Below are positions 5,575-61,055 of a stretch of 64,000 nt of DNA, piece after piece; the first letter of the stretch is position 1; the number at the start of each line of letters is the position of its first letter. The position numbers and the translations under genes were made by a program. The notes below the pieces were generated by a model, which did not search any database, was not told the DNA's origin, and saw nothing but the letters and a program-made list of their open reading frames with translations. The stretch spans positions 448,572-512,571 of the IMG/VR virus record IMGVR_UViG_3300028654_000001. One strand, written 5' to 3'.

Positions 5575-6134
5575 CGATTACGGGACTCCTGAAGCATTCT
5601 AATGAATAAAGCCCCTTGTTCTACGGCATCATCCAATGCAACATGAGTGTGCGGAGGAAGCCCCTCAAACCACCTTCGAGGCATGGTCTTCTTCGTGGTT
5701 CCTCTAAAGTTGGTCTTTAGTAGTGCCATAGCGAAGGTTTTCATATCCAAAGCTGAGAAGCTGAAGATACTAGTACCTAGGAATCGCACCAAATACCAGT
5801 GGACGAACTCAAAGTCAAACCCAGCCGGATATCCGACAAAAACAGGACTCAACTTAATACGTTTTACCCAATCAGCATACATGCTCATAGCCTCCCTTGG
5901 GGGAACAATAGCCTTCCGGCATTCAGCCCATTGCTTCGGACGCTCGCTCCACCATTTCATAGTGTCAGGGTGTCCAGAAGCTTCAGGGAGGGTTTCAAGG
6001 TTTACAGTGAAAGTACTCACTAAGTCCCCGTTAGCCCTGTAAGCTGCTGCCCCAAGACTAAGCATTGAATGTGGACCTGGGATAGGCCCGTCGGTTTCCA
6101 CATCGGTGGAAACATAGATTTCGTCATTATACAT
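5571..6134 (-). CDS. DEDDh 3'-5' exo(ribo)nuclease
   Basis: STDVETDG (ExoI), AGFDF (ExoII), HVALDDA (ExoIII). Confidence 0.85.
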
Positions 6135-6151
6135 TTTCCCCTCAAATACAC

Positions 6152-6181
6152 CAAGGGCTCCGATTCACACCGGAGCCCTTG
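6152..6181. terminator. 11-bp hairpin downstream of VWA gene
   Basis: CAAGGGCTCCG-N8-CGGAGCCCTTG; U-tract weak. Confidence 0.5.
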
Positions 6182-6193
6182 ACTATCACCTTA

Positions 6194-7633
6194 CTACCAC
6201 TGATTAATTCGACGCTTTGATAGGCTACCCTTACTCTCCACCTTGATAGGTTCAGGAGGGGTGATCACCGGAGTATTCACTACTGGATCCGGAGCCACGA
6301 AGTTGGATACCATGGCTTCCTGAACGTAGTTCATCCCGCCACCATAACCAGCATCCTTCAGTACAGCTGAATCCTCCACAGCCAGACCAGAGGTACCAAC
6401 CCGACGGCGCATGGCATTATGTAAACCCAATCGATTACCACCACTGGAAGAATACTGATGGGAATCCACGTACATGCCTTGAACGTGAGCTGCAACCGCT
6501 GCAACCCCAACGTGACCTCGGTCAGTCAAACCAAGCCCGTCGAACATACCTCTGGCCGCAGAGAAGTCACCTCGAGTAGCAGCTTCTTCCGCTCGAGTCT
6601 GAACCTTGACCAACTGGGCTCGTGCCACCAACTCGTCAACAGCTTTGGTTGGAGTCGTCTGCTCCTCCCCAGGCTTCACGAACTGAATCTTGGCGTTAAC
6701 CTCTTCGTTCTTCTGCTCAAACTGACCATCATAACCTAGAACCTTATAGGCCAGCTTCAGACCAATAGCATTAACCTGACGCGGACCCGGTTGCTTCTGA
6801 GTAGCCAGCTTCACCGCGATTACGACGTCCATAGTCTCCTCAGAAAGGATCTGAGGGATCTTAATCAGGGCTTCGCCAGTGGTCTCTTCCTCCACCTCGA
6901 GGTCAGAGACGACCTCGATAACCTGGTTGCCATTATGAGGGGCTACCTCGATGGTCAGGTTCTGAGCATAGCTGCTCAGCAGCCCACCAAGCTCCTTACC
7001 GAAGGCCGCGAGGGCATCATCTGGGTTCTGAACCCAGGCAAAGTTACCCTTACCCTTCTCAGCGAGGTTGGACAGCAGGGAGTGCACAACATCCTGACCG
7101 TAACCAAAAGCGGAGACAGTTGCTCGACCCGCTTGCTTCTCAACCAACGTACAGATTCCATCTGCGTTGGTCACCCCGTGCGTGGGTTGCCCGTCGGTGA
7201 ACATGATCACTCGAACGAGGGTGGTAGTCGACACATCGAGCTCATTGGCAGTCTTAAACCCAAGGAGCATCCCATCTGAGAAATTGGTGCACCCTTGTAC
7301 CTGGTACTGATTGATGATGCTCTTAGCCTTAGCTTTGAACTCAGCTGTCACCTTTTCAGGTGGAAGATCGACCTTGGCCGTATCAGAAAAGCTCACCAAG
7401 CCAAAAGTATCTTCACTAGTCAGATTCTCAACCATCTTGTGGAGAGAACGCTTTGCATACTCGAGCTTGCTACCCCTCATCGAGGTTGAAGTATCGAGGA
7501 CTGGGATTATGCAGAGTGGGGGCCGTTTAGCCTGCCAATCACTTCGCGGGGCCGTAAGGCTCAAAACGAGGTGAAGGTTATTGTCTTGGTCAAAACGGAC
7601 TTTTTCAAATGTAAATTGGGGATTTAGTTTCAT
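6194..7633 (-). CDS. von Willebrand factor A (VWA) domain protein
   Basis: MIDAS DTSTSM, GCTN, FTDGQP, FGYG, LAEKGKGNF. Confidence 0.9.
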   Translation of the reverse strand: MKLNPQFTFEKVRFDQDNNLHLVLSLTAPRSDWQAKRPPLCIIPVLDTSTSMRGSKLEYAKRSLHKMVENLTSEDTFGLVSFSDTAKVDLPPEKVTAEFKAKAKSIINQYQVQGCTNFSDGMLLGFKTANELDVSTTTLVRVIMFTDGQPTHGVTNADGICTLVEKQAGRATVSAFGYGQDVVHSLLSNLAEKGKGNFAWVQNPDDALAAFGKELGGLLSSYAQNLTIEVAPHNGNQVIEVVSDLEVEEETTGEALIKIPQILSEETMDVVIAVKLATQKQPGPRQVNAIGLKLAYKVLGYDGQFEQKNEEVNAKIQFVKPGEEQTTPTKAVDELVARAQLVKVQTRAEEAATRGDFSAARGMFDGLGLTDRGHVGVAAVAAHVQGMYVDSHQYSSSGGNRLGLHNAMRRRVGTSGLAVEDSAVLKDAGYGGGMNYVQEAMVSNFVAPDPVVNTPVITPPEPIKVESKGSLSKRRINQW

Positions 7634-7809
7634 GGGGCACTTTCGCTAATGCAATGGGTTTTGCTTCAGATGTGGAACCTGGACAGTGGTTCCCAAATCC
7701 AAAACGATCCGATTACGTCCGCGACTTTGCCCAAACCCCTCAGGGTGCGACTAGGTCGATTCAAGAGACCCAAGCGTGAGCGCGGTCTCGGTACTGACTA
7801 TTACACCAA

Positions 7810-8703: not shown

Positions 8704-9318
8704 TTACAAACCATCGATAGCACTGGGTTCAATAACCGAAGCAGGCCTAACTGCACGGCGAACCACTACAAATCCGTGTCTTTGTGCAACTAGATCCTTA
8801 GCTTGATCCACTATACACTGTTGGCTCCCAGAATGGTAGGGGCCGTCGAACTCCACGAGGATGTTAGCATCAAGTAGAGCCAGATCAAAAACATAAGACT
8901 CAAGTTCATATTCGAACTGATGAGGCCTACCCACAAGATACCCCTGAAGAGCCAGATACTTCCAGCCTTCCCTCCTACGAAGGACTTCTTCTTGGCTCAG
9001 CAAATTACCAACTTGTTGGAGTCCGCCTTGACGTTGAGCCTCACGTCGCTCTTCGCTCATGCTGTACCTACTGGAACAAGAGGGCGAACAATGCCGAGCA
9101 GCTTTCTCTTTGAGTGTAGTAGTGAACCTATTACCACAGGGGCAAGTCAGAACTACCTCAGCCTTTCTGGTCCTCAAAGCCGCATACAACCCAGAACAAG
9201 TAAGGTTGCAGAAGTGTCCTGACCCCTTCTTGTTGGACCGGTTGATCTCTCGATTCTCTTTAGGGAATGGTTTTCCGCAGTAGGTACAACTAACAATACT
9301 CGTCGCCATCGTCCCCAC
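8704..9318 (-). CDS. zinc-finger + DUF559/Vsr-like endonuclease next to tmRNA 3' end
   Basis: CTYCG..FCNLTC repeats then FEY, FDLAL, VEFDGPYH, DQAKD. Confidence 0.7.
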   Translation of the reverse strand: MGTMATSIVSCTYCGKPFPKENREINRSNKKGSGHFCNLTCSGLYAALRTRKAEVVLTCPCGNRFTTTLKEKAARHCSPSCSSRYSMSEERREAQRQGGLQQVGNLLSQEEVLRRREGWKYLALQGYLVGRPHQFEYELESYVFDLALLDANILVEFDGPYHSGSQQCIVDQAKDLVAQRHGFVVVRRAVRPASVIEPSAIDGL

Positions 9319-9363
9319 TACACCAAGGTGGAGACGATGGGACTTGCTAATTGTGGAGGTGGT

Positions 9364-9721: not shown

Positions 9722-9750
9722 CGTATACACCTGCTTTCTCCTAGGGTCAA
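9722..9750 (-). promoter_or_regulatory. sigma70-like promoter for tmRNA
   Basis: TTGACC-17 nt ending GGTG-TATACG. Confidence 0.7.
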
Positions 9751-10534: not shown

Positions 10535-10589
10535 ACCATCCGATTGTCGGTGCTTTACACCGGAAATAATCAAAGGTCAATACATTTTG

Positions 10590-11977: not shown

Positions 11978-12166
11978 TTACGCCAAACCTCTACTCTTTA
12001 GCTTGAATATCACCTGCATGACAGCAGGGTCATCCTTGCTTGGTAACTTGATCTTGTGCAGGATCTTGTACTTACCACTAGAATCAGTGGTATCTTGACG
12101 TTCGTCACTAGGACTCGACTGGCCTCGCAGCCAAGAGTCATTCTTTGGGTCAAACTTAATGTTCAT
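11978..12166 (-). CDS. hypothetical protein
   Basis: ATGA-coupled to upstream ART gene. Confidence 0.5.
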   Translation of the reverse strand: MNIKFDPKNDSWLRGQSSPSDERQDTTDSSGKYKILHKIKLPSKDDPAVMQVIFKLKSRGLA

Positions 12167-13463: not shown

Positions 13464-13796
13464 CTAACGGGAACGATTACTACAGTGGATGCTACCACCG
13501 GCATTGGCATTCCCATGAATATCTTGACAGTTGACGCTACCACCCGCGCTAGCTGATCCCTGGATGTTCTCAGCATGAACACTCCCTCCAGCACTCACGT
13601 TACCCGCGACATCTCCACAAGTGACAGACCCGTCAGCACGAAGGTTGACGAGAGGGGCTTCCCAGTTGATGTTGACAACACCTTGAAGACCACCCTCTAC
13701 CACCACCCCATCGATAGAGACTACCCCGTCGATTACCGAAAGGTTGGAGCCAGAGGGGCTTTCTATACGCTTACCGTTGATTACAATTACAGGCAT
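13464..13796 (-). CDS. small beta-solenoid-like repeat protein
   Basis: Repeated (S/N)AGGS(V/I) units; GGTGTA promoter just upstream. Confidence 0.65.
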   Translation of the reverse strand: MPVIVINGKRIESPSGSNLSVIDGVVSIDGVVVEGGLQGVVNINWEAPLVNLRADGSVTCGDVAGNVSAGGSVHAENIQGSASAGGSVNCQDIHGNANAGGSIHCSNRSR

Positions 13797-13816
13797 AGCC
13801 AGTAATACACCGTAGT

Positions 13817-14008: not shown

Positions 14009-14518
14009 CTAGTAGCGGTAGAGTTGAGCCTCTAGGGGAACAGTATCCTTACTGAAGGTTCCCTCTTGACCCTCAGGAATCAGTACAATACTGAGATCTG
14101 GAATACTCCTCGAGAGGAACACCTCGGTACTCCAAAGGAGACCTTGCAGACCAGACCTCAGGAACTCTATCTTCGTCTCTGGGGTGAAGATATCCCTACA
14201 ATGCTTACGAACATTGCAGAAAGTACTTGCAGTCATCCAAACCCGGCTCACTCTCTTATCTAACCGCTCAACTGAAAGGAAAGCGTCAGCAATTAAGTCA
14301 GGAGTGAGTAGGGTAGGAGTTGTAAGAGATCTCTCGAAACAATGAAGGGCTTCCTTCAAGTGTTCGAGACCCTTATCTTGCATCGGGTTCTTGTTGGTCT
14401 TCTTACCAACATTAGTAGCCAGCAAGAGGAAGTCCCCTCTCATCTGATTGATGATCTCGAGCTGGCTGTCAGTGAATAACTTCTTCGGGCCAAAAACAGA
14501 CTGAATATCTAAAGGCAT
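14009..14518 (-). CDS. hypothetical protein; helical hairpin + capsid-protein-like segment
   Basis: SD GGAGG; ADAFLSVERLDKRVSRVWM...GLLWSTEVFLSRSIP recalls a major-capsid A-domain segment. Confidence 0.55.
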   Translation of the reverse strand: MPLDIQSVFGPKKLFTDSQLEIINQMRGDFLLLATNVGKKTNKNPMQDKGLEHLKEALHCFERSLTTPTLLTPDLIADAFLSVERLDKRVSRVWMTASTFCNVRKHCRDIFTPETKIEFLRSGLQGLLWSTEVFLSRSIPDLSIVLIPEGQEGTFSKDTVPLEAQLYRY

Positions 14519-14545
14519 GATAACCTCCAGAACTCAAATACACCA

Positions 14546-14627: not shown

Positions 14628-15185
14628 TCAAACAACGAATCCGCCCAGGTTCCCAGCCATGAGCTCTTCATAGTCATACGTCTTTCCAAGACAATCCTTG
14701 ATGGTAACATCCTTGGTTCCGAACCCCATGAGATGCCCATCGTAGATTAGGATCTTGTCCGGTACCTTGGACTCACACCGAACGAACTTCTGACCTCTCT
14801 CGGTGATTCGGTACCGACCCGTCATGTCGACAACGGGCTTGTTACTCAAGACCGACTTCTTCACCGGCTGGTGCTCTTCAATGAGCTTCCAGCACTTGAG
14901 CTTGGACCACTCTCCGCCACGGACCTCAGACCCGACTGCAGCCATGTTCTCGAGGTACTTGGACACGTGAAGCCAATCCTCCGGAGTGTCCAGGAAGTGT
15001 CGGTACATCAAGATGAGTACGTAGGCCATCGTTGGGGATAAGTCCTTCTCGAGCACCCTCACCAACTGCTTGCAACAAGGGCAGATGACTCCAGAGCCCC
15101 GGACCCTTTGCTGCATCTGCTCCTGAGCTTTTGCAACCGTAGTGGTCTTAGGGTCAAGGTTGATCTCGAAGGGCTTCTTCGGCAT
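14628..15185 (-). CDS. conserved phage protein (Zn knuckle + winged-helix-like)
   Basis: CPCCKQ, WSKLKCWKLIE, GRYRITERGQKFV. Confidence 0.65.
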   Translation of the reverse strand: MPKKPFEINLDPKTTTVAKAQEQMQQRVRGSGVICPCCKQLVRVLEKDLSPTMAYVLILMYRHFLDTPEDWLHVSKYLENMAAVGSEVRGGEWSKLKCWKLIEEHQPVKKSVLSNKPVVDMTGRYRITERGQKFVRCESKVPDKILIYDGHLMGFGTKDVTIKDCLGKTYDYEELMAGNLGGFVV

Positions 15186-15210
15186 GCGATGTGATTACAC
15201 CTAAAAGATC

Positions 15211-15731: not shown

Positions 15732-16046
15732 TTATGACTTACGGTTAGGGAACTTTGACTTGGGGTTGACTGAGAACCCCAAAAGAAGGTTGTGGTCATT
15801 ATCATCGTAGTTCCCGCAAAGGTACCCAACCTCGGTACCCGGGATGGTCCCTATGACCCCATTGAGGAGGCCTAGGATGCTAAGAGTGGTTCGGTTAGCC
15901 ACCCGAACTTGAACCGTAGGGTGATCTGCTAGGACCTCATTCGCCGGAACTCGATGGGCGAACAAGGCCTTGATGGCCTCAGGATCAATCTGAAAGTATT
16001 CATTGAGGCACTTCACAATGTGCTCTGCTAGCTCTATCTGATCCAT
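15732..16046 (-). CDS. conserved phage hypothetical protein
   Basis: DPEAIKALFAHRVPANEVLADHPTVQV..LGLLNG; start at ATG after GGTGTA promoter. Confidence 0.7.
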   Translation of the reverse strand: MDQIELAEHIVKCLNEYFQIDPEAIKALFAHRVPANEVLADHPTVQVRVANRTTLSILGLLNGVIGTIPGTEVGYLCGNYDDNDHNLLLGFSVNPKSKFPNRKS

Positions 16047-16064
16047 GATAACCAGATACACCAG

Positions 16065-17196: not shown

Positions 17197-17406
17197 TTAC
17201 TGGTCAACAATCTCTACTTCACTCTCTTTCCACCAGTAGAGTGGAAAGTCCAACATCACATACCCTATGTAAGGTGGGTGATTTGGCATACTTGTAACAA
17301 CTCGTGTACTGGGTAATGGCTTTTCGATATCAAGCCCATTACGTAACAGGTAGTTATTCCAGGCCTCGGGTTTAATCTTTACGAGTGTACCTACTGAAAG
17401 ATCCAT
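17197..17406 (-). CDS. small SH3/KOW-like hypothetical protein
   Basis: LSVGTLVKIK..WWKESEVEIV; GGTGTA promoter 11 nt upstream. Confidence 0.6.
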   Translation of the reverse strand: MDLSVGTLVKIKPEAWNNYLLRNGLDIEKPLPSTRVVTSMPNHPPYIGYVMLDFPLYWWKESEVEIVDQ

Positions 17407-17604
17407 ACGGATCTATACACCATATCAGTGATAATTATCAGGACGCTGACAACTACTATCATGATGAAGATACTCACCTTGATAGCACCAAGAATCACAG
17501 TAACCACAGACTTGAACGGTGGGTTCCTTTTTGGGTTCCGACTTATGTTCCTTCAAAATCTCTGCTTCCATGGTAACCTCAACTGAGTCACAAAAAAAGA
17601 AGAT

Positions 17605-19543: not shown

Positions 19544-19579
19544 AGAGTTACACCAAGTAATTGAAACAAGTAAAAAGGT

Positions 19580-21115: not shown

Positions 21116-21437
21116 ACCGATCCCAATCAGTCCAGGGGAGATACCCTTTTGCGAGAGCCCAGCCTATTTTGGCTCGGCCTAAGACCTCCCTCGTCACGAG
21201 GGATAGTCGATCAAGGTCTTCCTTCGGAAGGGTTCCCTTGGAGATTGACTCCCTGAGATCTTTGAGCTTGATCACCCACCACGGGTACGGGTCCTCCTCG
21301 TTGTCAGTGACGTACCCAATCTCTAGGAGCTTGGGGTCATCATTGAGGAGGATGTTACCACCGTGCTGCTTGACATACTCCAAGATGGAGTTGCACATCT
21401 CGAAGAAGTCAGTGCATCTAGTCTGAGTCATTGGCAT
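21084..21437 (-). CDS. hypothetical protein
   Basis: Start at ATG after GGTGTA promoter. Confidence 0.55.
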   Translation of the reverse strand: MPMTQTRCTDFFEMCNSILEYVKQHGGNILLNDDPKLLEIGYVTDNEEDPYPWWVIKLKDLRESISKGTLPKEDLDRLSLVTREVLGRAKIGWALAKGYLPWTDWDRFDKIQTAYDA

Positions 21438-21558
21438 ACCTAGAACCAGTACACCAAAAGAAGTATGTGGATTGAACCCCACGACGCATCTCAAGCCACC
21501 CCTCACCACTCTTCACCCAGACCCTGATGATGTCTCCTTTGGCTAGAGGACTTTTAGG

Positions 21559-22983: not shown

Positions 22984-23490
22984 ATTTGTCCGATTACCCA
23001 CACCACAAGTCCAAGAACCAAATAAACCAGACTCTCGAACTAATCGAAGAAATGGACTCAATAGAATCCAAGCCTCATAAGGCATATCTCTTCTTATGTA
23101 GTTACATCGTATACAACACGGTATTACATTGGACTCAAGATGCCCAAGTGAGTTACCTCTACGATCCAAAGTCATTTTAAGTGAGGTCTCACCACAATAC
23201 TGACACTCTTGTGAGATTAACTTCTCGATAATCTCTTTGGTCAAGTCATTTGACCGCCCTGCCCTCCTATCTGACTGTTTAGAGTCCTTGAGTATGAACC
23301 CGGATCTGAATCTAGGATTAGCTCTTCGATCCCGATCAAGTCTATTATACATATCCCTAATTCGTTGGTTATCTCGATAGATCTTAGCAGTACCCTCCTT
23401 CTTCAAGTAGTAGCACTTCCTACAGACAGCACTCTTATCGTAAAAAGGCTCATCTGGGGTTTCTTCTTTACCACAAGAGCAGACTCGCAT
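22930..23490 (-). CDS. HNH-family endonuclease
   Basis: CQYCG..TLDRRGNSLGHLESNVIPCCIRCN; start at ATG after GGTGTA promoter; ends inside tRNA-Ser. Confidence 0.8.
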   Translation of the reverse strand: MRVCSCGKEETPDEPFYDKSAVCRKCYYLKKEGTAKIYRDNQRIRDMYNRLDRDRRANPRFRSGFILKDSKQSDRRAGRSNDLTKEIIEKLISQECQYCGETSLKMTLDRRGNSLGHLESNVIPCCIRCNYIRRDMPYEAWILLSPFLRLVRESGLFGSWTCGVGNRTNGRDGVSGRPPAWKPGCP

Positions 23491-23506
23491 ACTAAAGTTA
23501 CACCAG

Positions 23507-26178: not shown

Positions 26179-26540
26179 TATGAAAGTTCTTTGGAATCGT
26201 GTAGTCGACGCATCTGAATCTCGGCAGTATTCAGGGCGGCTTGGTAAACTGTGGATTCCCAGGGACTCAAGGACGCTTTATTTGGCTTGAACAAAGCCTT
26301 CTTCAAGAAGATCCCATCCATGCGGCCACATCTCTTGAGCTCGATTGGATTATCGATGATGAGGCCCAGAATGCCCATCGAGGCGTCCGAGGCCCCGCAC
26401 CAAGAGTCATCCCCACTGTTATTGAAGATGGCCCCAGAGAGGGCTATCTTACCGCACTGGAGGATGGTCAGGTGCCTCACCACAGGGGCGGGCATCCTAG
26501 CCAGGGTATCACCGATGAGGGTTCCTCGTTTGAGTGACAT
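26178..26540 (-). CDS. hypothetical protein
   Basis: ATG 11 nt after GGTG-TATTAT promoter. Confidence 0.55.
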   Translation of the reverse strand: MSLKRGTLIGDTLARMPAPVVRHLTILQCGKIALSGAIFNNSGDDSWCGASDASMGILGLIIDNPIELKRCGRMDGIFLKKALFKPNKASLSPWESTVYQAALNTAEIQMRRLHDSKELS

Positions 26541-26557
26541 GCTGAATAATACACCAG

Positions 26558-28729: not shown

Positions 28730-29191
28730 TTAGGATGGCATTGGGCCTGGGCCAATGTTGACTTCGTGTTTGACCCGGGTGAACCTATCGAACAGCGGCT
28801 TACCACCAAGGAGTTTGATGAGTCGGCACCGGGTCTTGAAGATGATCCTATGAAGACGGTTTGGATCTGGAGGTGGTGGTGGCTCATACTTGTGCCAATG
28901 ATTTCTTGCAGAACTCAAAGATGCTATTAGACATTGAACACCACCAGGGTCAGGTATCGCATCCGGGTACCCAGCTTCGACCTTGGTAGTACTAATCACC
29001 GAGGTTCCCCAAAGGTGCCCTACTAAATTACCACCCCACTCTGGTCTGGGTTCTGACTTACCAAGTAACTCATAGTCACCATGAGCAGCAAGAACTGGTA
29101 CATCTTCTGGGTGAACAAGAAGTACTGCTACTCGCAGATCTTCACATTCAACCCTAGACAAGGTATCAGAAACATCATGAAGCGTGATCAT
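28730..29191 (-). CDS. hypothetical protein with capsid-like segment
   Basis: VECEDLRVAVLLVHPED..VGHLWGTSVISTTKV similar to 14009-14518; GGTGTA promoter. Confidence 0.55.
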   Translation of the reverse strand: MITLHDVSDTLSRVECEDLRVAVLLVHPEDVPVLAAHGDYELLGKSEPRPEWGGNLVGHLWGTSVISTTKVEAGYPDAIPDPGGVQCLIASLSSARNHWHKYEPPPPPDPNRLHRIIFKTRCRLIKLLGGKPLFDRFTRVKHEVNIGPGPMPS

Positions 29192-29210
29192 AAAGATCAC
29201 TACACCGAAG

Positions 29211-31635: not shown

Positions 31636-31664
31636 ACCATACACCGAAGGAACAAGGGGGTCAA
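31636..31664 (-). promoter_or_regulatory. main promoter of tRNA/ncRNA array
   Basis: TTGACC-17 nt ending GGTG-TATGGT, A-rich UP-like tract upstream. Confidence 0.8.
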
Positions 31665-34848: not shown

Positions 34849-34868
34849 AAGGTTGACTTACACCAGAG

Positions 34869-35672
34869 TCACAAGTCAAAGTGCTGTTCTAAGACGTTTT
34901 TGATAGTTCGCTTGTATTTGTCCAATCGGCTATCAGCCCTGTTATCAGGAAACTCTTTACCCTCTAGGTAGGGAAGCATTCTACCACGTGTAATCTCGAC
35001 ATCACTATACCCATCTAGAATCAACTTGAAGTAAAGGCCAATGTCTTCCGCGTAATCAGAACTAACCGAACTCTCGAGCTCAGTTATGATCTGCTGCTGT
35101 TCTGATTGAGGTATCAAATCCCCAAGGTTATCCCAAGCTGACGGTTGCTCAACAACGTCGTCGAGGGTGTCGTGTTCCCTAAGCTTCTCACGCCTAAGTG
35201 TGTTGATGGTCTCATTCTTTACAGCGCTCAATGTGTAGTTCTCGGCATAGCTCAAGGACTGCCCTTGAATCTTGTTCTTGAAGTTCTTGTCCGAATAGAG
35301 CTTGAGAGACACTCTCGAGAGTACATCCTCGATAGCATCGTCCCTGGTAAAGGAGTTCTGGGATCTGGTTCGGAAGTCATTCTTCAAGTACCTGAACGCG
35401 GCTCCTCTGGCTCTCTTACCAAAGTCTAGACCGTAACCCTTTAGCCGAGTGATCTCCCTTGTATTCTTCGGCATGAATGGAGCCGGTGGCATATCCGTCA
35501 CGCCATACAACAAGAAAAGTCCATACATGAGCTGACCGAACTCAGCTGGCTCAGTAGCAAACTTGACTCGATGAAGTAGTCTGGCTACTCGCAGCCCCCA
35601 AGGTAGAGAGGCAGCAACCTTTGCCCGAAGATCTCTGGTAGCTCGCACTAAACGAGGAAGGGTGTCCATCAC
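34869..35672 (-). CDS. sigma-factor-like protein
   Basis: AIEDVLSRVSLKLY..YTLSAVKNETINTLRRE (region 2-like); LILDGYSDVEI (region 4-like). Confidence 0.55.
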   Translation of the reverse strand: MMDTLPRLVRATRDLRAKVAASLPWGLRVARLLHRVKFATEPAEFGQLMYGLFLLYGVTDMPPAPFMPKNTREITRLKGYGLDFGKRARGAAFRYLKNDFRTRSQNSFTRDDAIEDVLSRVSLKLYSDKNFKNKIQGQSLSYAENYTLSAVKNETINTLRREKLREHDTLDDVVEQPSAWDNLGDLIPQSEQQQIITELESSVSSDYAEDIGLYFKLILDGYSDVEITRGRMLPYLEGKEFPDNRADSRLDKYKRTIKNVLEQHFDL

Positions 35673-35696
35673 ACCAGATTTCGAATAAAGAGATCC

Positions 35697-36851
35697 TCAA
35701 TTCAAGTGAGCGAGTACTTTGAGTACTCGCTTCGGAAGCCTCATCCTGCTAACAATCTCTTCTGCAGTAAGCCCTCGAGCGACAAGTGACAGGATCTCCT
35801 CATGCTTTGCAGCAATTAGGTCTTCTTTCCCGTTGAAAAAGAACCCTAGTGCTTCATGTAGGGCATACATATTCTCTTGGCGAGGCCCATAGTTGTCAAC
35901 CAGAGTGTCTTCCCAGGACTTGCCAGTATCCAAGTCCATACCTGGGAAGTGCTCCTTGTACTTCCGATCTCTAGTGCGGCACCAATTAGCGTAAATGTTG
36001 TGAACTGACCTAGCTAAGTACAACTTGAAGTAAGGTTTTGGTTGAAGCTTGAGAGGTTGGACACTTGGATTACTCTTGCAACGAGGGTTGGTGTCCCGCT
36101 CACTCTTGAGCCGTTCAACGTCAGCCGTGTGGTAAGTGGCCACTCTGGAGCCATAAGTACCGCTAGCTGGAGTCAAGCACGGGCGCTCAGGAGGGCTATT
36201 TACAATTAGCAGTTCCTCTGGAACACCTCCGAACACCTTCACCACACAAGATGGGCAGAACACCTTGTATCTGACCTTGAAGGTATCGCCTTTCTTAAAG
36301 GAGATGGTCTCATCTAGGCCGACGTAACAGAATACTCGGTGGTTGCTTGGAACCCACATCCTGGCCATGACCTTTGCGTACTTGGCTCTATCGGAATACA
36401 ACCAATGGTCATCGAGGACGTGTTGAAGTTTCTTAGTGCTGTTCCCGCAGCAGTGACAATCAGGACCATCTCTCAGGAGTACTTCGTCTTTTAGGGTAGG
36501 GGAGGCTTGTCTAAAATACCCATTACTCTTACTTCGCGGATCGCCGTTCATACCTCTAATCTGCATGTACTTGAAACCCTCCCAGGTCATACCCAGAAAG
36601 GAGCAAGTTTGATCCGTGGTCAGAACTTTAGGGATTGAACCTGTAGACGAATTATACTTTGTTATTAAATCTACCCTGAGTATCTCGAGCCAGACATGTT
36701 GGAGTAGGTCATCGAAGTTGGCCGACACACGATTGTAACGAGTTACCAAACGAGTCACAAACGGTGCATATGACTTGTAAAGATCATCCCCGTTCTTAGG
36801 CACATAGTCGTCAGGTAAGCCAAAAGTAGCCTGATTAGCAGAATTAACCAC
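35697..36851 (-). CDS. sigma-factor-like protein with internal HTH/Zn insertion
   Basis: LYKSYAPFV..FDDLLQHVWL..[~200 aa]..FKLYLARSVHNIYANWCR..LVARGLTAEEIVSRM. Confidence 0.65.
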   Translation of the reverse strand: MVNSANQATFGLPDDYVPKNGDDLYKSYAPFVTRLVTRYNRVSANFDDLLQHVWLEILRVDLITKYNSSTGSIPKVLTTDQTCSFLGMTWEGFKYMQIRGMNGDPRSKSNGYFRQASPTLKDEVLLRDGPDCHCCGNSTKKLQHVLDDHWLYSDRAKYAKVMARMWVPSNHRVFCYVGLDETISFKKGDTFKVRYKVFCPSCVVKVFGGVPEELLIVNSPPERPCLTPASGTYGSRVATYHTADVERLKSERDTNPRCKSNPSVQPLKLQPKPYFKLYLARSVHNIYANWCRTRDRKYKEHFPGMDLDTGKSWEDTLVDNYGPRQENMYALHEALGFFFNGKEDLIAAKHEEILSLVARGLTAEEIVSRMRLPKRVLKVLAHLN

Positions 36852-39504: not shown

Positions 39505-39785
39505 ATTTGGCTCCAAGTTACTGGTTTGTGGTTGACAGATACTACACTTGGCGAGGCTGGATCTCCCCAAAACCTACAAGTTATCTGAGCAGTCTCCTAC
39601 ACGTAAGTGTTCATGAGAGGATCTGAATCTCAGATCTATTTTCGAACTGGCTTAAAATAAGCACCGGCCTTCTACTACTGAACATGGGAATTACGTCTTA
39701 AATTCAATTATTTTCTGGTATAGTTGTAGTAATCAACCTTGTCAGTAAAACCAACTCATAAGTCAGGGCGGTGTACTAATGCCTC

Positions 39786-40400
39786 ATGTCGATTGGTCTG
39801 CTCTCAAAAAGCGTCACAAATTTGATCAGGTCAGCCAAGGCTGCCTGGGGTCAGAGGTCAACCGGGATACTCTCCGGTAGGGCGATAGCCGCGGCCATCG
39901 ACGATGGGTCGATCATCATCGACCCATACGACCGGAAGCATTTGAACCCAGCCTCCTACGACTTGACTTTAGGTGATGAGGTTAAGATTTACGACATAAA
40001 CTCCATAGGAAACTGCACATTGGATTCGAAGAAGGCCAATCCGACCAGAGAGCTGAAGATCCCTCCAGAGGGGATTCGTCTCCTACCCGGTACTGGCTAC
40101 TTGATGCACACGCGCGAGAGGGTAGGGACCAAGAAGTTTGTCCCAATCATCGACGGAAAGTCAAGTATCGGTAGGCTTTTTGCTCTAATCCACTATACGG
40201 CCGGGTACGGTGACCCTGGGTTCTTCGGCCAATACACACTAGAGGTTTCGGTAGTACACTCTATCATCCTCTATGCGGGTATGCAGATTTGTCAGATTAG
40301 ATTCCAAACTATTAGTGGTGAAGTTGATCTTTACAACGGGCACTACAAGGGTGAAACAGCACAAGGAGCTGTAGCCTCTCACGCATATGAGCAGTTTTAG
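39786..40400 (+). CDS. dcd: dCTP deaminase
   Basis: LNPASYDLTLG, GKSSIGRL, TAGYGDPGFFGQYTLE, GMQICQI. Confidence 0.95.
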   Translation: MSIGLLSKSVTNLIRSAKAAWGQRSTGILSGRAIAAAIDDGSIIIDPYDRKHLNPASYDLTLGDEVKIYDINSIGNCTLDSKKANPTRELKIPPEGIRLLPGTGYLMHTRERVGTKKFVPIIDGKSSIGRLFALIHYTAGYGDPGFFGQYTLEVSVVHSIILYAGMQICQIRFQTISGEVDLYNGHYKGETAQGAVASHAYEQF

Positions 40401-48911: not shown

Positions 48912-49093
48912 GATTATCTCTCCATTTCCACCGAAGTGGAACAAGTTGCCCCAATAATTGAGGACCGTCACTTATACACTACCTTTTGAGACGTGCAAGG
49001 TAAAATCGACAGGAACCTCAAAAAGGGTTATCCCACAATGTGGCCAAGTTATGAAAATTACTTGACTTTTTGAGACGCCCTTCGGTGTAGAGA

Positions 49094-50026
49094 GTGGACA
49101 TGGCTGAAGATCCGTCCACCCTGATAGGCCAGGGAGTTGCTGACGCTTTAGGAATGCCCTTCGAAACCCGGAAACCGGATGATCCTTTCCTGGTCAACTG
49201 GGATGGTACTTATCAGGCTAGTGAGTATCATCAACTAAGACCTGGACAGTGGACTGACGATACAATGATGGCCAAGATCGTCATGGAGAGCCTATACATC
49301 TGTGGTGGGTTTTACCCAAGGGACATCGCCCAAAGGTACCAACACTGGTACCTCGCTGGTCCTCTACGAGGCATGGGGACTACCACAAAGAAGGCAATGC
49401 AGAACCTTCGAGCTGGAATGTCTTGGAGCGAAAGTGGGATAGTTGGGGCTGAAGGAAACGGAACAGCCATGAGGGCAGCTCCGTTCGGAGCATTTTACCA
49501 AGAGGATCCTTTTACGGCTGCCCAGTTCGCTCGGATGGAAGCCAATATTACTCACAAGTCTCTTGAAGCTGAGGAGGGTTCCGCCGCGGTAGCTGTAGCC
49601 GTCTCCCTACTCTGGACAGGAGCGGAACCTAAGGAAGTTGTTGCAAAAACGATGGAGTACCTTCGGGAGTCTAAGGTGAAGCTTGCTTTGAATAGGCTTG
49701 TGTTCTATCAAAAAAGCAATGACGTCTCCGCCAGTGAAGCCCTCAAACTCTTTGGTACAAAGGCACACGTTGTTCAAACTGTACCATCAGCATTCGCAGC
49801 CTTTGTCCTCACGGCTTCTTATGAAGAAGCCGTTCTCACATCCATTAGATCGGGAGGGGACACGGATACAACAGCCGCCATTGCTGGGGCCCTTGCCGGA
49901 ACCTACTACGGATTCAAGGCCATCCCTAAAAAGTACCGAGAAGGACTCGAGGACTGGGAACATCTGAGAAAGATTGAGTCCAAGATTAACGTTGGGCCAA
50001 ATACCAGTGTTCTCTGGAGACTATGA
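49094..50026 (+). CDS. ADP-ribosylglycohydrolase (DraG/ARH family)
   Basis: ADALGMPFE, WTDDT, GNGTAMRAAP, ITH, GGDTDTTAAIAGALAG. Confidence 0.95.
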   Translation: MDMAEDPSTLIGQGVADALGMPFETRKPDDPFLVNWDGTYQASEYHQLRPGQWTDDTMMAKIVMESLYICGGFYPRDIAQRYQHWYLAGPLRGMGTTTKKAMQNLRAGMSWSESGIVGAEGNGTAMRAAPFGAFYQEDPFTAAQFARMEANITHKSLEAEEGSAAVAVAVSLLWTGAEPKEVVAKTMEYLRESKVKLALNRLVFYQKSNDVSASEALKLFGTKAHVVQTVPSAFAAFVLTASYEEAVLTSIRSGGDTDTTAAIAGALAGTYYGFKAIPKKYREGLEDWEHLRKIESKINVGPNTSVLWRL

Positions 50027-50031
50027 GTTAG

Positions 50032-50103
50032 AGACCCCAGGGGGGTTCGAACCCCCGCATATGGAGTTAGAGTCCGGTGTTCTGCCAATTGAACTATGGG
50101 GTC
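50032..50103 (-). tRNA. amber suppressor-type tRNA(CTA)
   Basis: Acceptor GACCCCA/TGGGGTC, D and T arms canonical, loop CT-CTA-AC, only 3-bp anticodon stem. Confidence 0.75.
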
Positions 50104-53932: not shown

Positions 53933-53975
53933 ACTAAGTGTAATCGATAGAGAGGTTATTGGTGTACTTCACAAA

Positions 53976-54353
53976 GTGGCTGACTTCTACAAGCTAAACG
54001 GAAAAGTAGCAGTTCCGATTGATACAGACGAATACATCCGGTGGCTTATTGATGATCCAGACCACGGGAGGAGGGTAGTAGCCTTCAACGAGTTCAATAA
54101 CAGAGAGGTCAGGGTATCGACGGTCTTCATACTTGGAATCAACCATGCGTTCGGTGAAGGGGACCCGCTCTTATTCGAGACCATGATCTTTGAGGGTACG
54201 ATGGATGGCTATCAGGTTAGGTACTCAACTTGGGAGCAAGCCGAAGCTGGTCACGCAGCAGCTCTAGAAGAACTGTTCAAGCAAATGCCTGAGATCAGAC
54301 CACCTATAGAAGGGTACGCCACCAGATTTGAAAGGATCCTTAGAGATGATTGA
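53976..54353 (+). CDS. conserved phage hypothetical protein
   Basis: VSTVF..PLLFETMIF..RYSTWEQAEAGH; GGTGTA promoter. Confidence 0.7.
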   Translation: MADFYKLNGKVAVPIDTDEYIRWLIDDPDHGRRVVAFNEFNNREVRVSTVFILGINHAFGEGDPLLFETMIFEGTMDGYQVRYSTWEQAEAGHAAALEELFKQMPEIRPPIEGYATRFERILRDD

Positions 54354-56553: not shown

Positions 56554-56985
56554 TCAGGGAAGAACGAACTTGTAGTCCAGAGACCGAGAACAAGGCCAAG
56601 TCCTGTGACAATCTGGGCATTCCCAGAACTCAACCCTATCGGTGCCGCGGTCGACATGCCCTATCTGTCGTAACCCTGGCGGTCCATGCTCCAAGTCTCG
56701 GAGATCTGCCCTACAATGGGGGCACTCAAGGGTCGCCCCATCTCTCCACTTGTACCAGTAGGCCCCGTAGCTGTTCACCATCTCAAGAACGGTACGGTGG
56801 TTCCCTGGTACGGTTTCCTTTGGGTAAACTCCAAGTTCAGTTAGGGCATCAATGTAGATCTGGATCCTAGCCGGGTTGGCCGCTGAGTACTTCAAATGCT
56901 CTTCTTGGAGCATCTCTAGAAGTCTTTCGTTATCACCCATCTCTCTCAAAACCTCAATAATGTCTCGAACTTCATTCTCTTTCAT
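56554..56985 (-). CDS. zinc-ribbon hypothetical protein
   Basis: CPHC..WECPDC; GGTG-TATATT promoter. Confidence 0.6.
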   Translation of the reverse strand: MKENEVRDIIEVLREMGDNERLLEMLQEEHLKYSAANPARIQIYIDALTELGVYPKETVPGNHRTVLEMVNSYGAYWYKWRDGATLECPHCRADLRDLEHGPPGLRQIGHVDRGTDRVEFWECPDCHRTWPCSRSLDYKFVLP

Positions 56986-57005
56986 GCTTCAATATACACC
57001 GAGTT

Positions 57006-58775: not shown

Positions 58776-59118
58776 GAATAGCCTCAACCAAGGCCTTCCC
58801 ATCAATAGGTTTTTTGAAGAGGCGGCACCCAGACTTGTTAATATACACCTCGAGATCCGACGGCATCCCACCAGAGCAGAAGAAGAACTTGTTTAGCAAG
58901 TACGGGCGATTCTTAGCTACCCACTCGTGAAGTTCAACCCCAGTGCCATTAGGCATTCTAACATCCGAGACCACTGCCAAGAATCTGTACTGACGCAAAG
59001 CTTCCTTTGCGTCTTCAATGCAACAAACTGCAGTGACCTTGACCCCACTTCTCTCAATAACCCTTTTTAGCGCCTCTCGGACAAGAGCATCATCATCTAC
59101 TAGTAGTATAAAAGACAT
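58708..59118 (-). CDS. single-domain response regulator receiver (CheY-like)
   Basis: ILLVDDD, VVSDVRMPNGTGVEL, CSG, KKPI. Confidence 0.9.
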   Translation of the reverse strand: MSFILLVDDDALVREALKRVIERSGVKVTAVCCIEDAKEALRQYRFLAVVSDVRMPNGTGVELHEWVAKNRPYLLNKFFFCSGGMPSDLEVYINKSGCRLFKKPIDGKALVEAIHAVRSPASSKPVATNGASTRGL

Positions 59119-59307
59119 TTGGTGTACTTACACCAATCTTTACCAGATTTAGTGCACATTTGTGGACCAAAATGAGTGCATTGTTGAAATAAGTACAGAT
59201 AACTACAGCATGCTACCTGAGTATTCGATAATCTATGATTGACTAAACCGGTGTAATGACTAAAGTTAGGTCAACTTAGACCTAACTTAGACCGAAGATC
59301 TCGAGCT

Positions 59308-59601
59308 ATGGAAGACACTCAGACTCAAACTACCGACACTACGATCAACTGCATCGACTGCCACCAAAACTTTACTTTCACAGTCAGAGAACAAGAGTTC
59401 TTTGCCAAGATGGGGTACAAACCAACGCGGCGATGCGTTCCTTGCCGAGCTAAGAGGCGAGCTGAATTTAACGGAACCGAGCAATCTGGAAATTCAGTCC
59501 AGAGCACTCCAGTTCGTGAAGAGCTTCCTCCAACTGGGGGTAAGAAGAAGAGTGGTGGTCGAGGTGGTCGACGTAATCAAAATGATTACGATGAAGACTG
59601 A
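59308..59601 (+). CDS. zinc-ribbon protein (CxxC..FTF..EQEFF..PRRC type)
   Basis: CIDCHQNFTFTVREQEFFAKMG..PTRRCVPCR. Confidence 0.8.
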   Translation: MEDTQTQTTDTTINCIDCHQNFTFTVREQEFFAKMGYKPTRRCVPCRAKRRAEFNGTEQSGNSVQSTPVREELPPTGGKKKSGGRGGRRNQNDYDED

Positions 59602-60008
59602 AAGCCTCTGATCGGGAACCGAATGAACGGTTCCTCGAAGTTCAGACTGTAGTTAACACTCGGGGTATCCCCTGCTGTGAGGTTCACCCCGAGTTCAAGA
59701 TCCATCCGCTGAGTGGGTACCGCTGTTGTTTCAGATGACCATATAGCGAGCCTAGCCAGGTGAATAGGCCCTGGAAGAGGTGGGAAGTTGAGGGTACCCA
59801 TTATGGATCCAACTCTAATCCTAGGGGTTTGCTCGCGGCCCTGACTATCAAGAAGTGATACCCAGAACTCGATATCAGATAATGCTGGCTCTAGTGTAGG
59901 GGGTTCGGGAGGATCCCTTTGGGAGAGTCTAACTGGTCTGACTATAACCCAGTACTCTTCGAGGTCGTCCGTATCACTCACGGGTTTCTCAGTTTGACTA
60001 GAACACAA
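59586..60008 (-). CDS. hypothetical protein (start uncertain)
   Basis: Follows coaE. Confidence 0.45.
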   Translation of the reverse strand: MCSSQTEKPVSDTDDLEEYWVIVRPVRLSQRDPPEPPTLEPALSDIEFWVSLLDSQGREQTPRIRVGSIMGTLNFPPLPGPIHLARLAIWSSETTAVPTQRMDLELGVNLTAGDTPSVNYSLNFEEPFIRFPIRGFQSSS

Positions 60009-60577
60009 AGAGCTTTTTGCAAAAGTTCATCTTTGGTTCCGTTATTCCAGATTACGTGGTTAGCTAACTTAACCTTCTCCTCCATCGGGATCTGCGCTGA
60101 AAGCCTAGCTCTGGCCTCCTCTTCTGTAAAGCCATCTCGCTCTTGAACCCTCTTCAGTTGAACCTCTGGGGAGACTGCAACGACTACAAGAGGGCGGTAT
60201 TCGTCCTGGTGTCCCTTCTCAATGATGAGGGCGGCGTCAAGCCCGACAAGCGGATGCGACTCAATGAGTTTCCTCAATTGAGATCCGATCTCATCAGACA
60301 GGATCCCTTGGACGATATTGTCAAGGGTCCCCCTTTTCTGGGGATCCAGAAAGACCATAGAACCTAACTTAGGACGGTTCAGAGAACCGTCGGGGAGGAG
60401 AATATGATCCCCAAAGGCACTGACCAACATTCTCAAAGCTGGCATCCCAGGAGCCACAATCGAGCGAGCTACCTCGTCAGCATCAACCATTGGAACGCCA
60501 TCCACACGAAATAACCTAGTAACTGTACTTTTTCCTGAAGCAATGCCACCAGTTAGGCCGAATACCCTACCTCGCAT
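59978..60577 (-). CDS. coaE: dephospho-CoA kinase
   Basis: GLTGGIASGKSTV, VDADEVAR, LNRPKLG, QLKRVQERD, IWNNG. Confidence 0.93.
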   Translation of the reverse strand: MRGRVFGLTGGIASGKSTVTRLFRVDGVPMVDADEVARSIVAPGMPALRMLVSAFGDHILLPDGSLNRPKLGSMVFLDPQKRGTLDNIVQGILSDEIGSQLRKLIESHPLVGLDAALIIEKGHQDEYRPLVVVAVSPEVQLKRVQERDGFTEEEARARLSAQIPMEEKVKLANHVIWNNGTKDELLQKALCVLVKLRNP

Positions 60578-60656
60578 AATTGGAGCATACACCAATGTCA
60601 CCGAATTGTGGATTTACTTTGAACTTTTCTTGGTGTAGTAGTCGATTATCAAGGAA

Positions 60657-61055
60657 ATGGCACAACAATCACTATTCTCCGTGCTCGGTTTGTTGATTAG
60701 AGATGGGAAGATTCTTGCGGTTTCCAGAAAGGACAATCACACAGATCTTGGGTTACCTGGGGGAAAGATTGATCCTGGTGAGACCCCTGAACAAGCTCTA
60801 ATTCGAGAGTTGGGGCAAGAGATTGGGGTTAGACCCAAGGAATTCAGAAAGATTTTCGAGGATCTAGACCGTATTGTGGGTGGGGAGCTTCGCCCATGTC
60901 GTACTTACCTGATTGAGTCCTGGGAAGGGGAGCCGGTTTCATTGGAGGCCGCCGTTATTGAGTGGGTACATCCTCCAAGGCTACTGGAACCAACCCACTC
61001 ATTCCACCAATACAACCAAAAGCTCTTTGATCACATCGGGCCGATCTGGCTCTGA
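60657..61055 (+). CDS. NUDIX hydrolase
   Basis: LPGGKIDPGETPEQALIRELGQEIG. Confidence 0.9.
   Translation: MAQQSLFSVLGLLIRDGKILAVSRKDNHTDLGLPGGKIDPGETPEQALIRELGQEIGVRPKEFRKIFEDLDRIVGGELRPCRTYLIESWEGEPVSLEAAVIEWVHPPRLLEPTHSFHQYNQKLFDHIGPIWL

What the first reader, a model, noticed from the sequence alone, without database searches (positions are those of the whole stretch)
6134..60657. Widespread leaderless genes behind a GGTG-TAnnnn extended -10 promoter
Seen: GGTGTA is followed by a start codon at nearly fixed spacing (4-6 nt after the -10 hexamer) with no SD at 13796, 15185, 16046, 17406, 23490, 26540, 29191, 34848, 39786, 53976, 56985 and 60577. The same GGTG-TA element follows TTGAC(C)-type -35 boxes before the tmRNA, 10534 and the array leader. 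Inference: transcription starts at or next to the AUG, so much of the phage proteome is translated from leaderless mRNA. The -10 lacks the usual conserved final T, hinting at a phage sigma or modified host polymerase. This also corrects many starts in the ORF track.
Basis: partly seen in the sequence, partly recalled or inferred. Interest (0 to 1): 0.6.

Follow-up and report, generated by a model that had tools for sequence, protein, structure and literature searches.

The report
Phage promoter hexamer abutting start codons
A 0.5-Mb soil phage and its relatives place an invariant GGTGTA hexamer 9-10 bases before the start codons of about one gene in six, most likely a phage-specific promoter that makes mRNAs with no leader; the principle is known, this motif and this phage group are new.

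Summary
All 12 listed sites hold, and I found 5 more in the window. Genome-wide (512,571-bp phage with terminal repeats), 64 GGTGTA copies have an ATG or GTG opening at least 60 codons exactly 15-16 nt downstream, against about 4 expected. No single-mismatch variant shows this peak. The sites lack Shine-Dalgarno (SD) sequences and never use TTG. They are enriched 2-3-fold at divergent gene junctions. Five carry TTGAC at a 17-bp spacing, including the tmRNA promoter, and an SD reappears when the leader is long. The hexamer survives as an island before orthologous genes in relatives. The same signature marks other 0.37-0.45-Mb phages (GC 59-64%), one of which has GGTG-TATGGT, a full TAnnnT box. 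It is absent from 76 unrelated phage loci and 61 Myxococcota genomes. The best reading is a -10-type promoter that starts transcription at or within 2 nt of the start codon. The likely reader is a clade-specific phage sigma. The candidate is window ORF 35697-36851, a divergent sigma with an HNH-like insertion, conserved in four of the five motif-bearing relatives tested. No RNA data exist, so start sites are inferred. "Much of the proteome" is overstated: 13-17% of genes.

The parts
13794..13811 (-). GGTGTA + 9 nt + ATG (110-aa ORF). It lies 5 nt after the 3' end of tRNA-Arg(CCG). The longest-ORF TTG start at 13865 lies inside that tRNA.
15183..15201 (-). GGTGTA + 10 nt + ATG (185-aa ORF).
16044..16062 (-). 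GGTGTA + 10 nt + ATG (104-aa ORF), directly after tRNA-Gly(CCC). The ATG at 16094 lies inside the tRNA.
17404..17421 (-). GGTGTA + 9 nt + ATG (69-aa ORF).
23488..23504 (-). GGTGTA + 8 nt + ATG (186-aa ORF). The 67 upstream in-frame codons score as non-coding.
26538..26555 (-). GGTGTA + 9 nt + ATG (120-aa ORF), directly after tRNA-Pro(GGG).
29189..29206 (-). GGTGTA + 9 nt + ATG (153-aa ORF). The G001 orthologue keeps the hexamer, there after a tRNA-like 3' end.
34846..34864 (-). GGTGTA + 10 nt + GTG of the N6/N4 DNA methylase (463 aa). The hexamer and its spacing are kept in relatives L020-L023, L200 and L201, while the spacer has diverged.
39770..39788 (+). GGTGTA + 10 nt + ATG of the dCTP deaminase gene (204 aa). 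Orthologues in L201 and L202 keep the hexamer at 14 and 16 nt.
53961..53978 (+). GGTGTA + 9 nt + GTG (125-aa ORF). The G001 orthologue keeps the hexamer.
56983..57000 (-). GGTGTA + 9 nt + ATG (143-aa ORF). The whole gap to the divergent gene at 57006 is 20 nt.
60575..60593 (-). GGTGTA + 10 nt + ATG of the dephospho-CoA kinase gene (199 aa). The CoaE domain starts at residue 5. The G001 orthologue keeps the hexamer.
9307..9324 (-). Extra site: GGTGTA + 9 nt + ATG (201-aa DUF559-like ORF).
49084..49102 (+). Extra site: GGTGTA + 10 nt + ATG of the ADP-ribosylglycohydrolase gene (308 aa). The G001 orthologue keeps the hexamer.
59116..59134 (-). Extra site: GGTGTA + 10 nt + ATG of a receiver-domain protein (136 aa). 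The domain starts at residue 4.
21435..21455 (-). Extra site: GGTGTA + 12 nt + ATG (117-aa ORF). A leader of about 2 nt is expected.
6132..6152 (-). GGTGTA + 12 nt + ATG (187-aa exonuclease-like ORF), after a hairpin. The spacer holds GAGGGG, so the leaderless status is ambiguous.
9726..9750 (-). TTGACC-N13-GGTGTA promoter. The mature 5' end of the tmRNA (9710) lies 21 nt from the first G, so it drives a non-coding RNA.
10556..10580 (-). TTGACC-N13-GGTGTA promoter. The in-frame ATG at 10534 implies a leader of about 11 nt.
31640..31664 (-). Duplicated TTGACC(CC) box, N13, then GGTGTA, at the head of a roughly 620-nt non-coding stretch that leads into the tRNA array.
14516..14544 (-). Leadered variant: GGTGTA, then 20 nt that contain GGAGG, then ATG at 14518 (169 aa).
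60632..60659 (+). Leadered variant: GGTGTA + 19 nt (AAGGAA) + ATG of the NUDIX gene at 60657. It is divergent from the 60593 site.
35697..36851 (-). Candidate specificity factor: a 384-aa divergent sigma-70-family protein. It has regions 2.1-2.2, an HNH-like Cys-rich insertion, regions 2.3-2.4 and a C-terminal helix-turn-helix. It is SD-led, not GGTGTA-led, and is conserved in four of the five motif-bearing relatives tested.
34869..35672 (-). Second clade-conserved sigma-like gene (267 aa, ECF-like sigma2 + sigma4 model), lying between the sigma gene and the methylase gene.

Best explanation
YYGGTGTA is a promoter element of the -10 type. Its TA occupies about -12/-11 (or -11/-10) relative to the first base of the start codon. 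RNA polymerase therefore starts at, or 1-2 nt before, the A or G of ATG or GTG. The mRNA has no leader and no SD, and would be translated by the 5'-terminal-AUG (70S-type) route known for leaderless mRNAs. A TTGAC box 17 bp upstream strengthens a few copies, such as those before the tmRNA and the tRNA array. Where the gene begins further downstream, an ordinary SD is used instead. What is shown: the motif, its strictness, its spacing, its context and its conservation. What is inferred: the TSS position, and that a phage sigma reads the element. For the second inference I give about even odds to the clade-conserved sigma-like pair at 35697-36851 and 34869-35672, against the host primary sigma.
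For: (1) Spacing: 64 sites at 15-16 nt against 4.3 expected, and only the exact hexamer shows the peak. The A of the TA lies 10-11 nt from the start codon, which is the canonical A(-11)-to-+1 distance. (2) Start features: start codons are ATG (74) or GTG (16) and never TTG (p = 1e-6). Position -1 is a pyrimidine in 68% of sites. (3) SD use: SD 5-mers precede 2% of motif starts and 19% of other genes. SD returns in 5 of 11 sites with leaders of 25 nt or more (p = 1e-4). (4) DNA-level behaviour: 46% of motif genes have a divergent upstream neighbour, against 21% of others (p = 3e-6). There are back-to-back TACACC|GGTGTA pairs in intergenic gaps of 18-34 nt. TTGAC sits at a 17-bp spacing in 5 sites, one driving the tmRNA. 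Antisense copies in gene bodies number 56 against 80 expected, the 18th most depleted of 4096 hexamers, whereas sense copies are not depleted. (5) Conservation: 11 of 16 orthologue pairs between G000 and G001 keep the hexamer while the flanks diverge, and methylase and dCTP deaminase orthologues keep it in distant relatives. (6) Clade-wide counts against the control pattern: G001 42 vs 2, G068 63 vs 3, G069 60 vs 0, G070 79 vs 6. In G068 the box is GGTG-TATGGT, with the final T in 15 of 19 sites. (7) Specificity: there is no peak in 667 kb of unrelated phage loci or in 61 Myxococcota genomes. (8) Polymerase and sigma: no phage RNA polymerase was detected. ORF 35697-36851 has a sigma2 fold; most of the top 33 VIA-align rows are sigma domain 2, at Z 6-8. 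It is present in G001, G068, G069 and G070. (9) A second, bipartite motif class also abuts ATG, which shows independently that promoters sit on start codons in this genome.
Against: There are no RNA data of any kind, so +1 is inferred from geometry. Six invariant bases give about 200 background copies per genome, and sense-strand intragenic copies are not depleted, so either extra determinants exist or internal starts are tolerated. The spacer is not AT-rich and the -7 T is missing here. TG is one base off the canonical extended -10 position. Terminators are not enriched upstream of co-directional motif genes. The link to the sigma rests on co-occurrence in related, non-independent genomes. 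The host is unknown; the only hint is that the nearest cellular CoaE proteins are Myxococcota, at 45-47% identity.
Confidence: 0.72

Rival explanations
1. It is the same promoter and the same leaderless architecture, but the host's primary sigma reads it as an unusual extended -10 (GGTG + TAnnnT), with no phage sigma involved.
For: TTGAC lies at the canonical 17-bp spacing in 5 sites. There is a full TAnnnT hexamer in G068. The two clearly canonical phage sigmas (188 and 269 aa) are not conserved in the other motif-bearing phages. Leaderless genes behind bare -10 boxes are the host norm in Deinococcus-Thermus (PMC12340547).
Against: All six bases are invariant, with no tolerated mismatch, which is unlike housekeeping -10 boxes. 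There is no enrichment in 61 Myxococcota genomes, although the host is not established. The motif is stable across phages of 49-64% GC, and a conserved phage sigma-like pair travels with it.
Confidence: 0.2
2. GGUGUA acts in the RNA as a start-associated translation signal, a substitute ribosome-binding site read by the ribosome or a phage factor on polycistronic mRNA. This would resemble the start-associated sequences of cluster K mycobacteriophages.
For: The spacing to start codons is strict. About half of the sites follow a co-directional gene closely, with a median gap of 38 nt. GGUG can pair with the CACC of the anti-SD.
Against: The real SD-type GGTGAT in this genome sits at -10 to -7, not at -16. 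The motif also precedes the tmRNA, with a -35 box. It is enriched at divergent junctions. SD reappears when the distance grows. Antisense copies are depleted. TTG starts are absent and -1 is a pyrimidine. In a relative the motif is a TAnnnT box.
Confidence: 0.06
3. GGUGUA marks an RNA-processing site. A phage or host endoribonuclease cuts about 10 nt downstream and releases leaderless mRNAs from long precursors, for example after tRNAs.
For: Five sites directly follow tRNA 3' ends. Many lie in tightly packed co-directional gene runs.
Against: It does not explain the divergent back-to-back pairs, the -35 association, the TAnnnT form in G068 or the antisense depletion.
Confidence: 0.04

Closest known systems
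Leaderless genes behind a bare -10 box (TANNNT 6-7 bp before the ORF) in Deinococcus-Thermus and Actinobacteria (PMC12340547; PMC4633059)
   Same: A -10-like element sits at a fixed 5-7 bp before ATG or GTG. There is no SD. An optional -35 box 17 bp upstream enhances. A second set of genes uses GGAG-type SDs.
   Different: Here the conserved part is GGTG + TA, the final T is not conserved, and all six bases are invariant. It is a property of a phage clade and was not seen in the bacterial genomes tested.
Middle and late genes of Thermus phage phiYS40, and P23-45 (Sevostyanova et al. 2007 as summarised in PMC3594737; details from my own knowledge)
   Same: A large phage whose later genes are transcribed from promoters that lack a -35 box and yield leaderless mRNAs, alongside SD-led genes.
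   Different: Those promoters are read by host sigma-A holoenzyme and look like TATAAT or extended -10 boxes. phiYS40 shifts host IF2 and IF3 levels; no IF2, IF3, EF-Tu or bS21 gene is found here. The motif, host and phage lineage are unrelated.
T4 late promoters (TATAAATA read by gp55, a sigma reduced to region 2, with gp33 and the sliding clamp)
   Same: A short, nearly invariant -10-only element read by a highly divergent phage sigma. T4 gp55 (7d7d_F) is among the structural matches of ORF 35697-36851, at Z 7.1.
   Different: T4 late mRNAs have leaders and SDs. The sequences are unrelated. No clamp dependence can be inferred here.
Start-associated sequences of cluster K mycobacteriophages (own knowledge: Pope et al. 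2011)
   Same: A phage-specific conserved short sequence at a fixed place before a subset of start codons.
   Different: The cluster K sequence is 13 bp, contains the SD and lies 3-8 nt from the start. GGTGTA lacks an SD, lies 9-10 nt away and shows promoter-like context.

Membership tests
Sigma-70-type -10 element adjoining an ORF (leaderless gene architecture) | TA of the hexamer lies about 11-12 nt before the first base of the start codon. | tested here: met
   Offsets 15 or 16 in 62 of 87 sites put the A at -10 or -11.
Sigma-70-type -10 element adjoining an ORF (leaderless gene architecture) | A conserved T at the last hexamer position (-7). | tested here: not met
   T in 18 of 87 sites in this genome. 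It is met in relative G068, in 15 of 19 sites.
Sigma-70-type -10 element adjoining an ORF (leaderless gene architecture) | No SD, and a start codon limited to ATG or GTG. | tested here: met
   SD 5-mers at 2% against 19% elsewhere; 0 TTG among 90 starts.
Sigma-70-type -10 element adjoining an ORF (leaderless gene architecture) | The primary 5' end of the mRNA maps to the start codon. | not testable with these tools
   Only DNA runs hold this sequence.
Extended -10 (TGn) promoters | TG at -15/-14, one base away from the hexamer. | tested here: not met
   In GGTGTA the TG directly abuts the TA, so it sits at -14/-13.
Shine-Dalgarno-type ribosome-binding site | Complementarity to the anti-SD, 4-9 nt before the start. 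| tested here: not met
   Only GGTG could pair, and it lies 11-12 nt away. Genuine SDs (AGGAG, GAGGT, GTGAT) peak at -12 to -7 in the other genes.
Sigma-70 family (ORF 35697-36851) | Region 2 (core binding and -10 recognition). | tested here: met
   Pfam Sigma70_r2 scores 25.0 bits against a cut-off of 24. The blocks NFEDLLQHVW and FKxYLARSVHNIYANWCRTR are conserved in 40 homologues. The sigma2 domain dominates the structural matches, at Z 6-8.
Sigma-70 family (ORF 35697-36851) | A region 4 helix-turn-helix, and binding to RNA polymerase core. | tested here: inconclusive
   The C-terminal helix-turn-helix matches LuxR/GerE-type domains only weakly (E about 0.06-0.1). Core binding was not tested.

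The most novel reading that the evidence does not exclude
A clade of 0.4-0.5-Mb soil phages carries its own transcription code. A sigma factor split by an HNH-like zinc module, possibly working with the adjacent ECF-like sigma and the always-linked N6/N4 methylase, reads a -10-only GGTGTA box. In this way it converts 60-90 genes per genome to leaderless expression, separating phage gene expression from host promoter and SD rules.
Probability: 0.3. Interest if true: 0.75.

Novelty: new variant of a known kind. Interest (0 to 1): 0.6.

Why it matters
It gives a simple sequence rule, YYGGTGTA-N9/10-ATG or GTG. The rule fixes start codons and transcription units in a whole group of uncultured giant phages, where gene callers pick wrong starts (32 of 87 cases here). 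It names a testable sigma-promoter pair: a sigma with an HNH-like insertion and a 6-bp -10-only box. It also extends large-scale leaderless expression, so far documented for Thermus phages and for a few bacterial phyla, to megaphages from soil. An orthogonal promoter this compact could also serve as a tool.

Tried and rejected
- RNA evidence: none of the 17 runs that hold the DNA is an RNA run. Read laying was therefore not used, because contigs cannot show 5' ends.
- Megablast of 8 kb against GenBank phages found nothing. The GroEL-like protein is about 44% identical to any GroEL, so it says nothing about the host.
- Host: no WhiB or Lsr2 gene. ADP-ribosylglycohydrolase found no cellular relative. 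CoaE found only three Myxococcota assemblies, at 45-47% identity; this is a weak hint, and the motif is not enriched in 61 Myxococcota genomes.
- The codon-shuffle null for hexamer depletion proved unusable, because many hexamers deviate by |z| > 7. I replaced it with a phase-specific Markov expectation.
- TTGAC-N17-TA as a general host-type promoter gave no signal.
- Hairpins and terminators upstream of co-directional motif genes do not differ from other genes.
- Foldseek against the PDB gave no significant match for the sigma model, and the profile search against PDB sequences gave only weak helix-turn-helix hits.
- No Pfam hits for RNA polymerase beta, beta' or T7-type polymerase, and none for IF2/EF-Tu, IF3 or bS21.
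- A literature search for GGTGTA as a promoter or in a leaderless context found nothing relevant.
- Table 11 was used throughout. The tRNA(CUA) was not taken as evidence for another genetic code, since TAG ends 24% of the genes. Nothing resembling human sequence was met.


Full report
**What the window is.** The 64-kb window is the right end (448,572-512,571) of a 512,571-bp IMG/VR virus record with direct terminal repeats, rated 100% complete. GC content is 49%. The DNA occurs in rhizosphere and soil metagenomes, and no RNA run holds it. The window carries 42 tRNA genes, a tmRNA and a tRNA(CUA). My crude gene model gives about 663 protein genes covering 87% of the genome. Table 11 was used throughout.

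**The observation.**
- Every one of the 12 listed sites is correct, and five more exist in the window: starts at 9309, 21437, 49100, 59118 and 6134.
- Genome-wide there are 297 GGTGTA copies. An ATG or GTG that opens at least 60 codons lies 15 nt (28 sites) or 16 nt (36 sites) from the first G, against 4.3 expected for two offsets (p = 4e-51).
- GGTGTA is the strongest position-specific hexamer before start codons (z = 17).
- None of the 18 single-mismatch variants shows any peak, in this genome or in a relative.
- Aligned, the element reads YYGGTGTA(nT). It has no -35 box, no T at the end of a TAnnnn hexamer (18 of 87) and no other conserved position.

**Is it a promoter or an RNA signal?** Several independent lines point to a DNA-level promoter that puts +1 on the start codon.
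- *Geometry.* The A of the TA is 10-11 nt from the start codon, the canonical A(-11)-to-+1 distance. The start is ATG (74) or GTG (16) and never TTG, although TTG makes up 14% of SD-led starts. Position -1 is a pyrimidine in 68% of sites.
- *SD use.* SD 5-mers precede 2% of these starts, 19% of the other genes and 6% of internal ATGs. The other genes use a normal AGGAG/GAGGT/GTGATC SD at -12 to -7. So the GGTG at -16 is not the local form of an SD.
- *Longer leaders.* Sixty-five further intergenic copies share the YY context. Among those that precede real genes by 25 nt or more, 5 of 11 have a strong SD (p = 1e-4). An example is 14544-14518, which contains GGAGG.
- *Gene context.* 46% of motif genes are the first gene after a divergent neighbour, against 21% of other genes (p = 3e-6). 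Some divergent pairs share only 18-34 nt, made of two back-to-back hexamers (genome 203061/203078 and 222696/222697; window 56985/57006).
- *A -35 box.* Five copies have TTGAC exactly 17 bp before the TA, against 0.3 expected. One drives the tmRNA, which is not translated as an mRNA, and one heads the tRNA array.
- *Strand bias.* Antisense copies inside genes are under-represented: 56 against 80 expected by a phase-specific Markov model, rank 18 of 4096. Sense copies are not (84 against 89).
- *Start positions.* In the 16 cases with 12 or more upstream in-frame codons, the ORF extension scores as non-coding (0.06 against 0.24 bits per codon). Pfam domains begin within a few residues of the proposed N-termini.

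**Conservation.**
- The methylase gene at 34848 keeps GGTGTA at 15-16 nt in four relatives that are 66-74% identical in protein, while the spacer differs completely.
- Against a 228.6-kb relative (G001), 11 of 16 orthologue pairs keep the hexamer at 14-17 nt as an island in diverged sequence.
- Whole-record counts of GGTGTA-N9/10-ATG against a reversed control pattern are: G001 42 vs 2; G068 (372 kb, GC 59%) 63 vs 3; G069 (435 kb, complete, GC 64%) 60 vs 0; G070 (448 kb, complete, GC 61%) 79 vs 6.
- In G068 the element is CC-GGTG-TATGGT, with a T at the last hexamer position in 15 of 19 sites. That is a full TAnnnT box placed 6 nt before the ATG. It identifies the TA of GGTGTA as the start of a -10 hexamer.
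- Controls: 76 unrelated phage loci (667 kb) show no peak, and 61 Myxococcota genomes show no enrichment.

**Who reads it?**
- No phage RNA polymerase is detectable.
- The genome encodes two clear sigma-70-family proteins, of 188 and 269 aa. Neither has a homologue in the other motif-bearing phages.
- Window ORF 35697-36851 (384 aa) is conserved in G001, G068, G069 and G070. It has 55 metagenomic homologues, many on contigs of 0.2-0.5 Mb.
- Its alignment shows sigma regions 2.1-2.2 and 2.3-2.4 separated by a Cys-rich insertion, followed by a C-terminal helix-turn-helix.
- The model (pLDDT 78) matches sigma domain 2 in most of the top rows, including SigI6, SigB, SigC, gp55 and RpoS, at Z 6-8. 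The insertion matches an HNH domain at Z 6.3. These Z values are middling; the consistency of the matches and the Pfam hit above its cut-off carry the call.
- The next gene, 34869-35672, is also conserved and models as an ECF-like sigma2 + sigma4 protein. Some homologues are named sigma-24 family by their source.
- The order sigma-like, sigma-like, methylase holds even in relatives with 31-35% identity.
- All five sigma-like orthologues are SD-led rather than GGTGTA-led, as expected for the factor that switches the class on.
- This assignment rests on co-occurrence in related genomes and remains an inference.

**A second class, outside the window.** Between 34 and 158 kb of the genome, 21 sites read (T)TG-GTGAGATC-N13-15-(C)GTA(G/A)TACTGAGC. 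In 16 of them ATG follows 5-6 nt after GTAnTA. Two have a 21-22-nt leader with a GAGGGA SD. This bipartite promoter recalls ECF-type promoters (own knowledge: -35 ..AAC, -10 CGT). It also abuts start codons, and it occurs in a relative too.

**Comparison with what is known.** The architecture is that of leaderless genes in Deinococcus-Thermus and Actinobacteria (PMC12340547, PMC4633059) and of the middle and late genes of Thermus phage phiYS40 (PMC3594737). phiKZ and AR9, in contrast, use leaders (PMC8244752, PMC5312081). New here are the invariant GGTG-TA element, its restriction to a clade of giant soil phages and the candidate split sigma. I found no prior description of it.

**Limits.**
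- Transcription start sites are inferred, not observed.
- The host is unknown.
- About 200 background GGTGTA copies per genome are unexplained.
- The share of genes concerned is 13-17%, not "much of the proteome".

Noticed in passing
Outside the window: genome 34,475-158,291 (e.g. G000:C1:73410, 87586, 140970): A second promoter-like class: TTG-GTGAGATC-N13-15-CGTA(G/A)TACTGAGC-ATG. There are 21 sites before small ORFs, 16 of them with ATG 5-6 nt after GTAnTA. Its arms GTGAG / CTCA / TGAG are mutually complementary. It is also present in IMGVR_UViG_3300037067_007264.
   Followed up: partly
window 33457-36851 (-): A conserved three-gene module: sigma-like protein with an HNH-like insertion, ECF-like sigma, then N6/N4 DNA methylase. 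It is kept even in relatives with 31-35% identity (L200-L202). Whether the methylase targets the promoter hexamer is unknown.
   Followed up: partly
window 31106-31189 (-) and 21896-21970 (-): Sub-threshold tRNA-like elements that ARAGORN missed (Rfam tRNA-Sec model, 33 and 30 bits). The first looks like a long-variable-arm tRNA with anticodon GTA (Tyr), an isoacceptor otherwise absent from the array.
   Followed up: partly
window 31023-31640 (-): About 620 nt without a convincing ORF lie between a strong TTGACC/GGTGTA promoter and the first tRNA of the array. This may be a structured leader or an unknown RNA. Rfam matched only the tRNA-like element.
   Followed up: partly
window 50031-50103 (-): A tRNA with a CUA anticodon (amber suppressor type; ARAGORN calls it Pyl). 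TAG still ends 162 of 662 called genes, so nothing suggests genome-wide recoding.
   Followed up: partly
window 19543-19554 (-): A GGTGTA with the usual YY context lies only 11 nt before the mature 5' end of tRNA-Trp. That is too close for the geometry seen elsewhere and is unexplained.
   Followed up: no
window 28085-28135, 59116-59134; genome 222680-222714: Several hexamers are embedded in longer perfect palindromes (e.g. gtgataac..GGTGTA..gttatcac; ttagttaccacTACACCGGTGTAgtggtaacta). These may be operator sites.
   Followed up: no
window 63486-64000: A tandem repeat with a 42-nt unit, 12.5 copies at 89% identity, inside a long minus-strand ORF that runs off the end of the window.
   Followed up: no
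window 2696-4342, 12163-13353, 47262-48971, 49100-50026, 52523-53932: Cargo genes: a GroEL-like chaperonin, a DRAT-like ADP-ribosyltransferase paired with an ADP-ribosylglycohydrolase, a Ro60/TROVE-vWA protein and a TnpB-like (OrfB_IS605 / Cas12f TNB) ORF. A second TnpB-like gene at genome 285339-286967 is GGTGTA-led.
   Followed up: no
genome 320-440 kb (outside the window): Both motif classes are nearly absent from this long minus-strand block, presumably the structural and late genes. A third promoter class is to be expected there.
   Followed up: no
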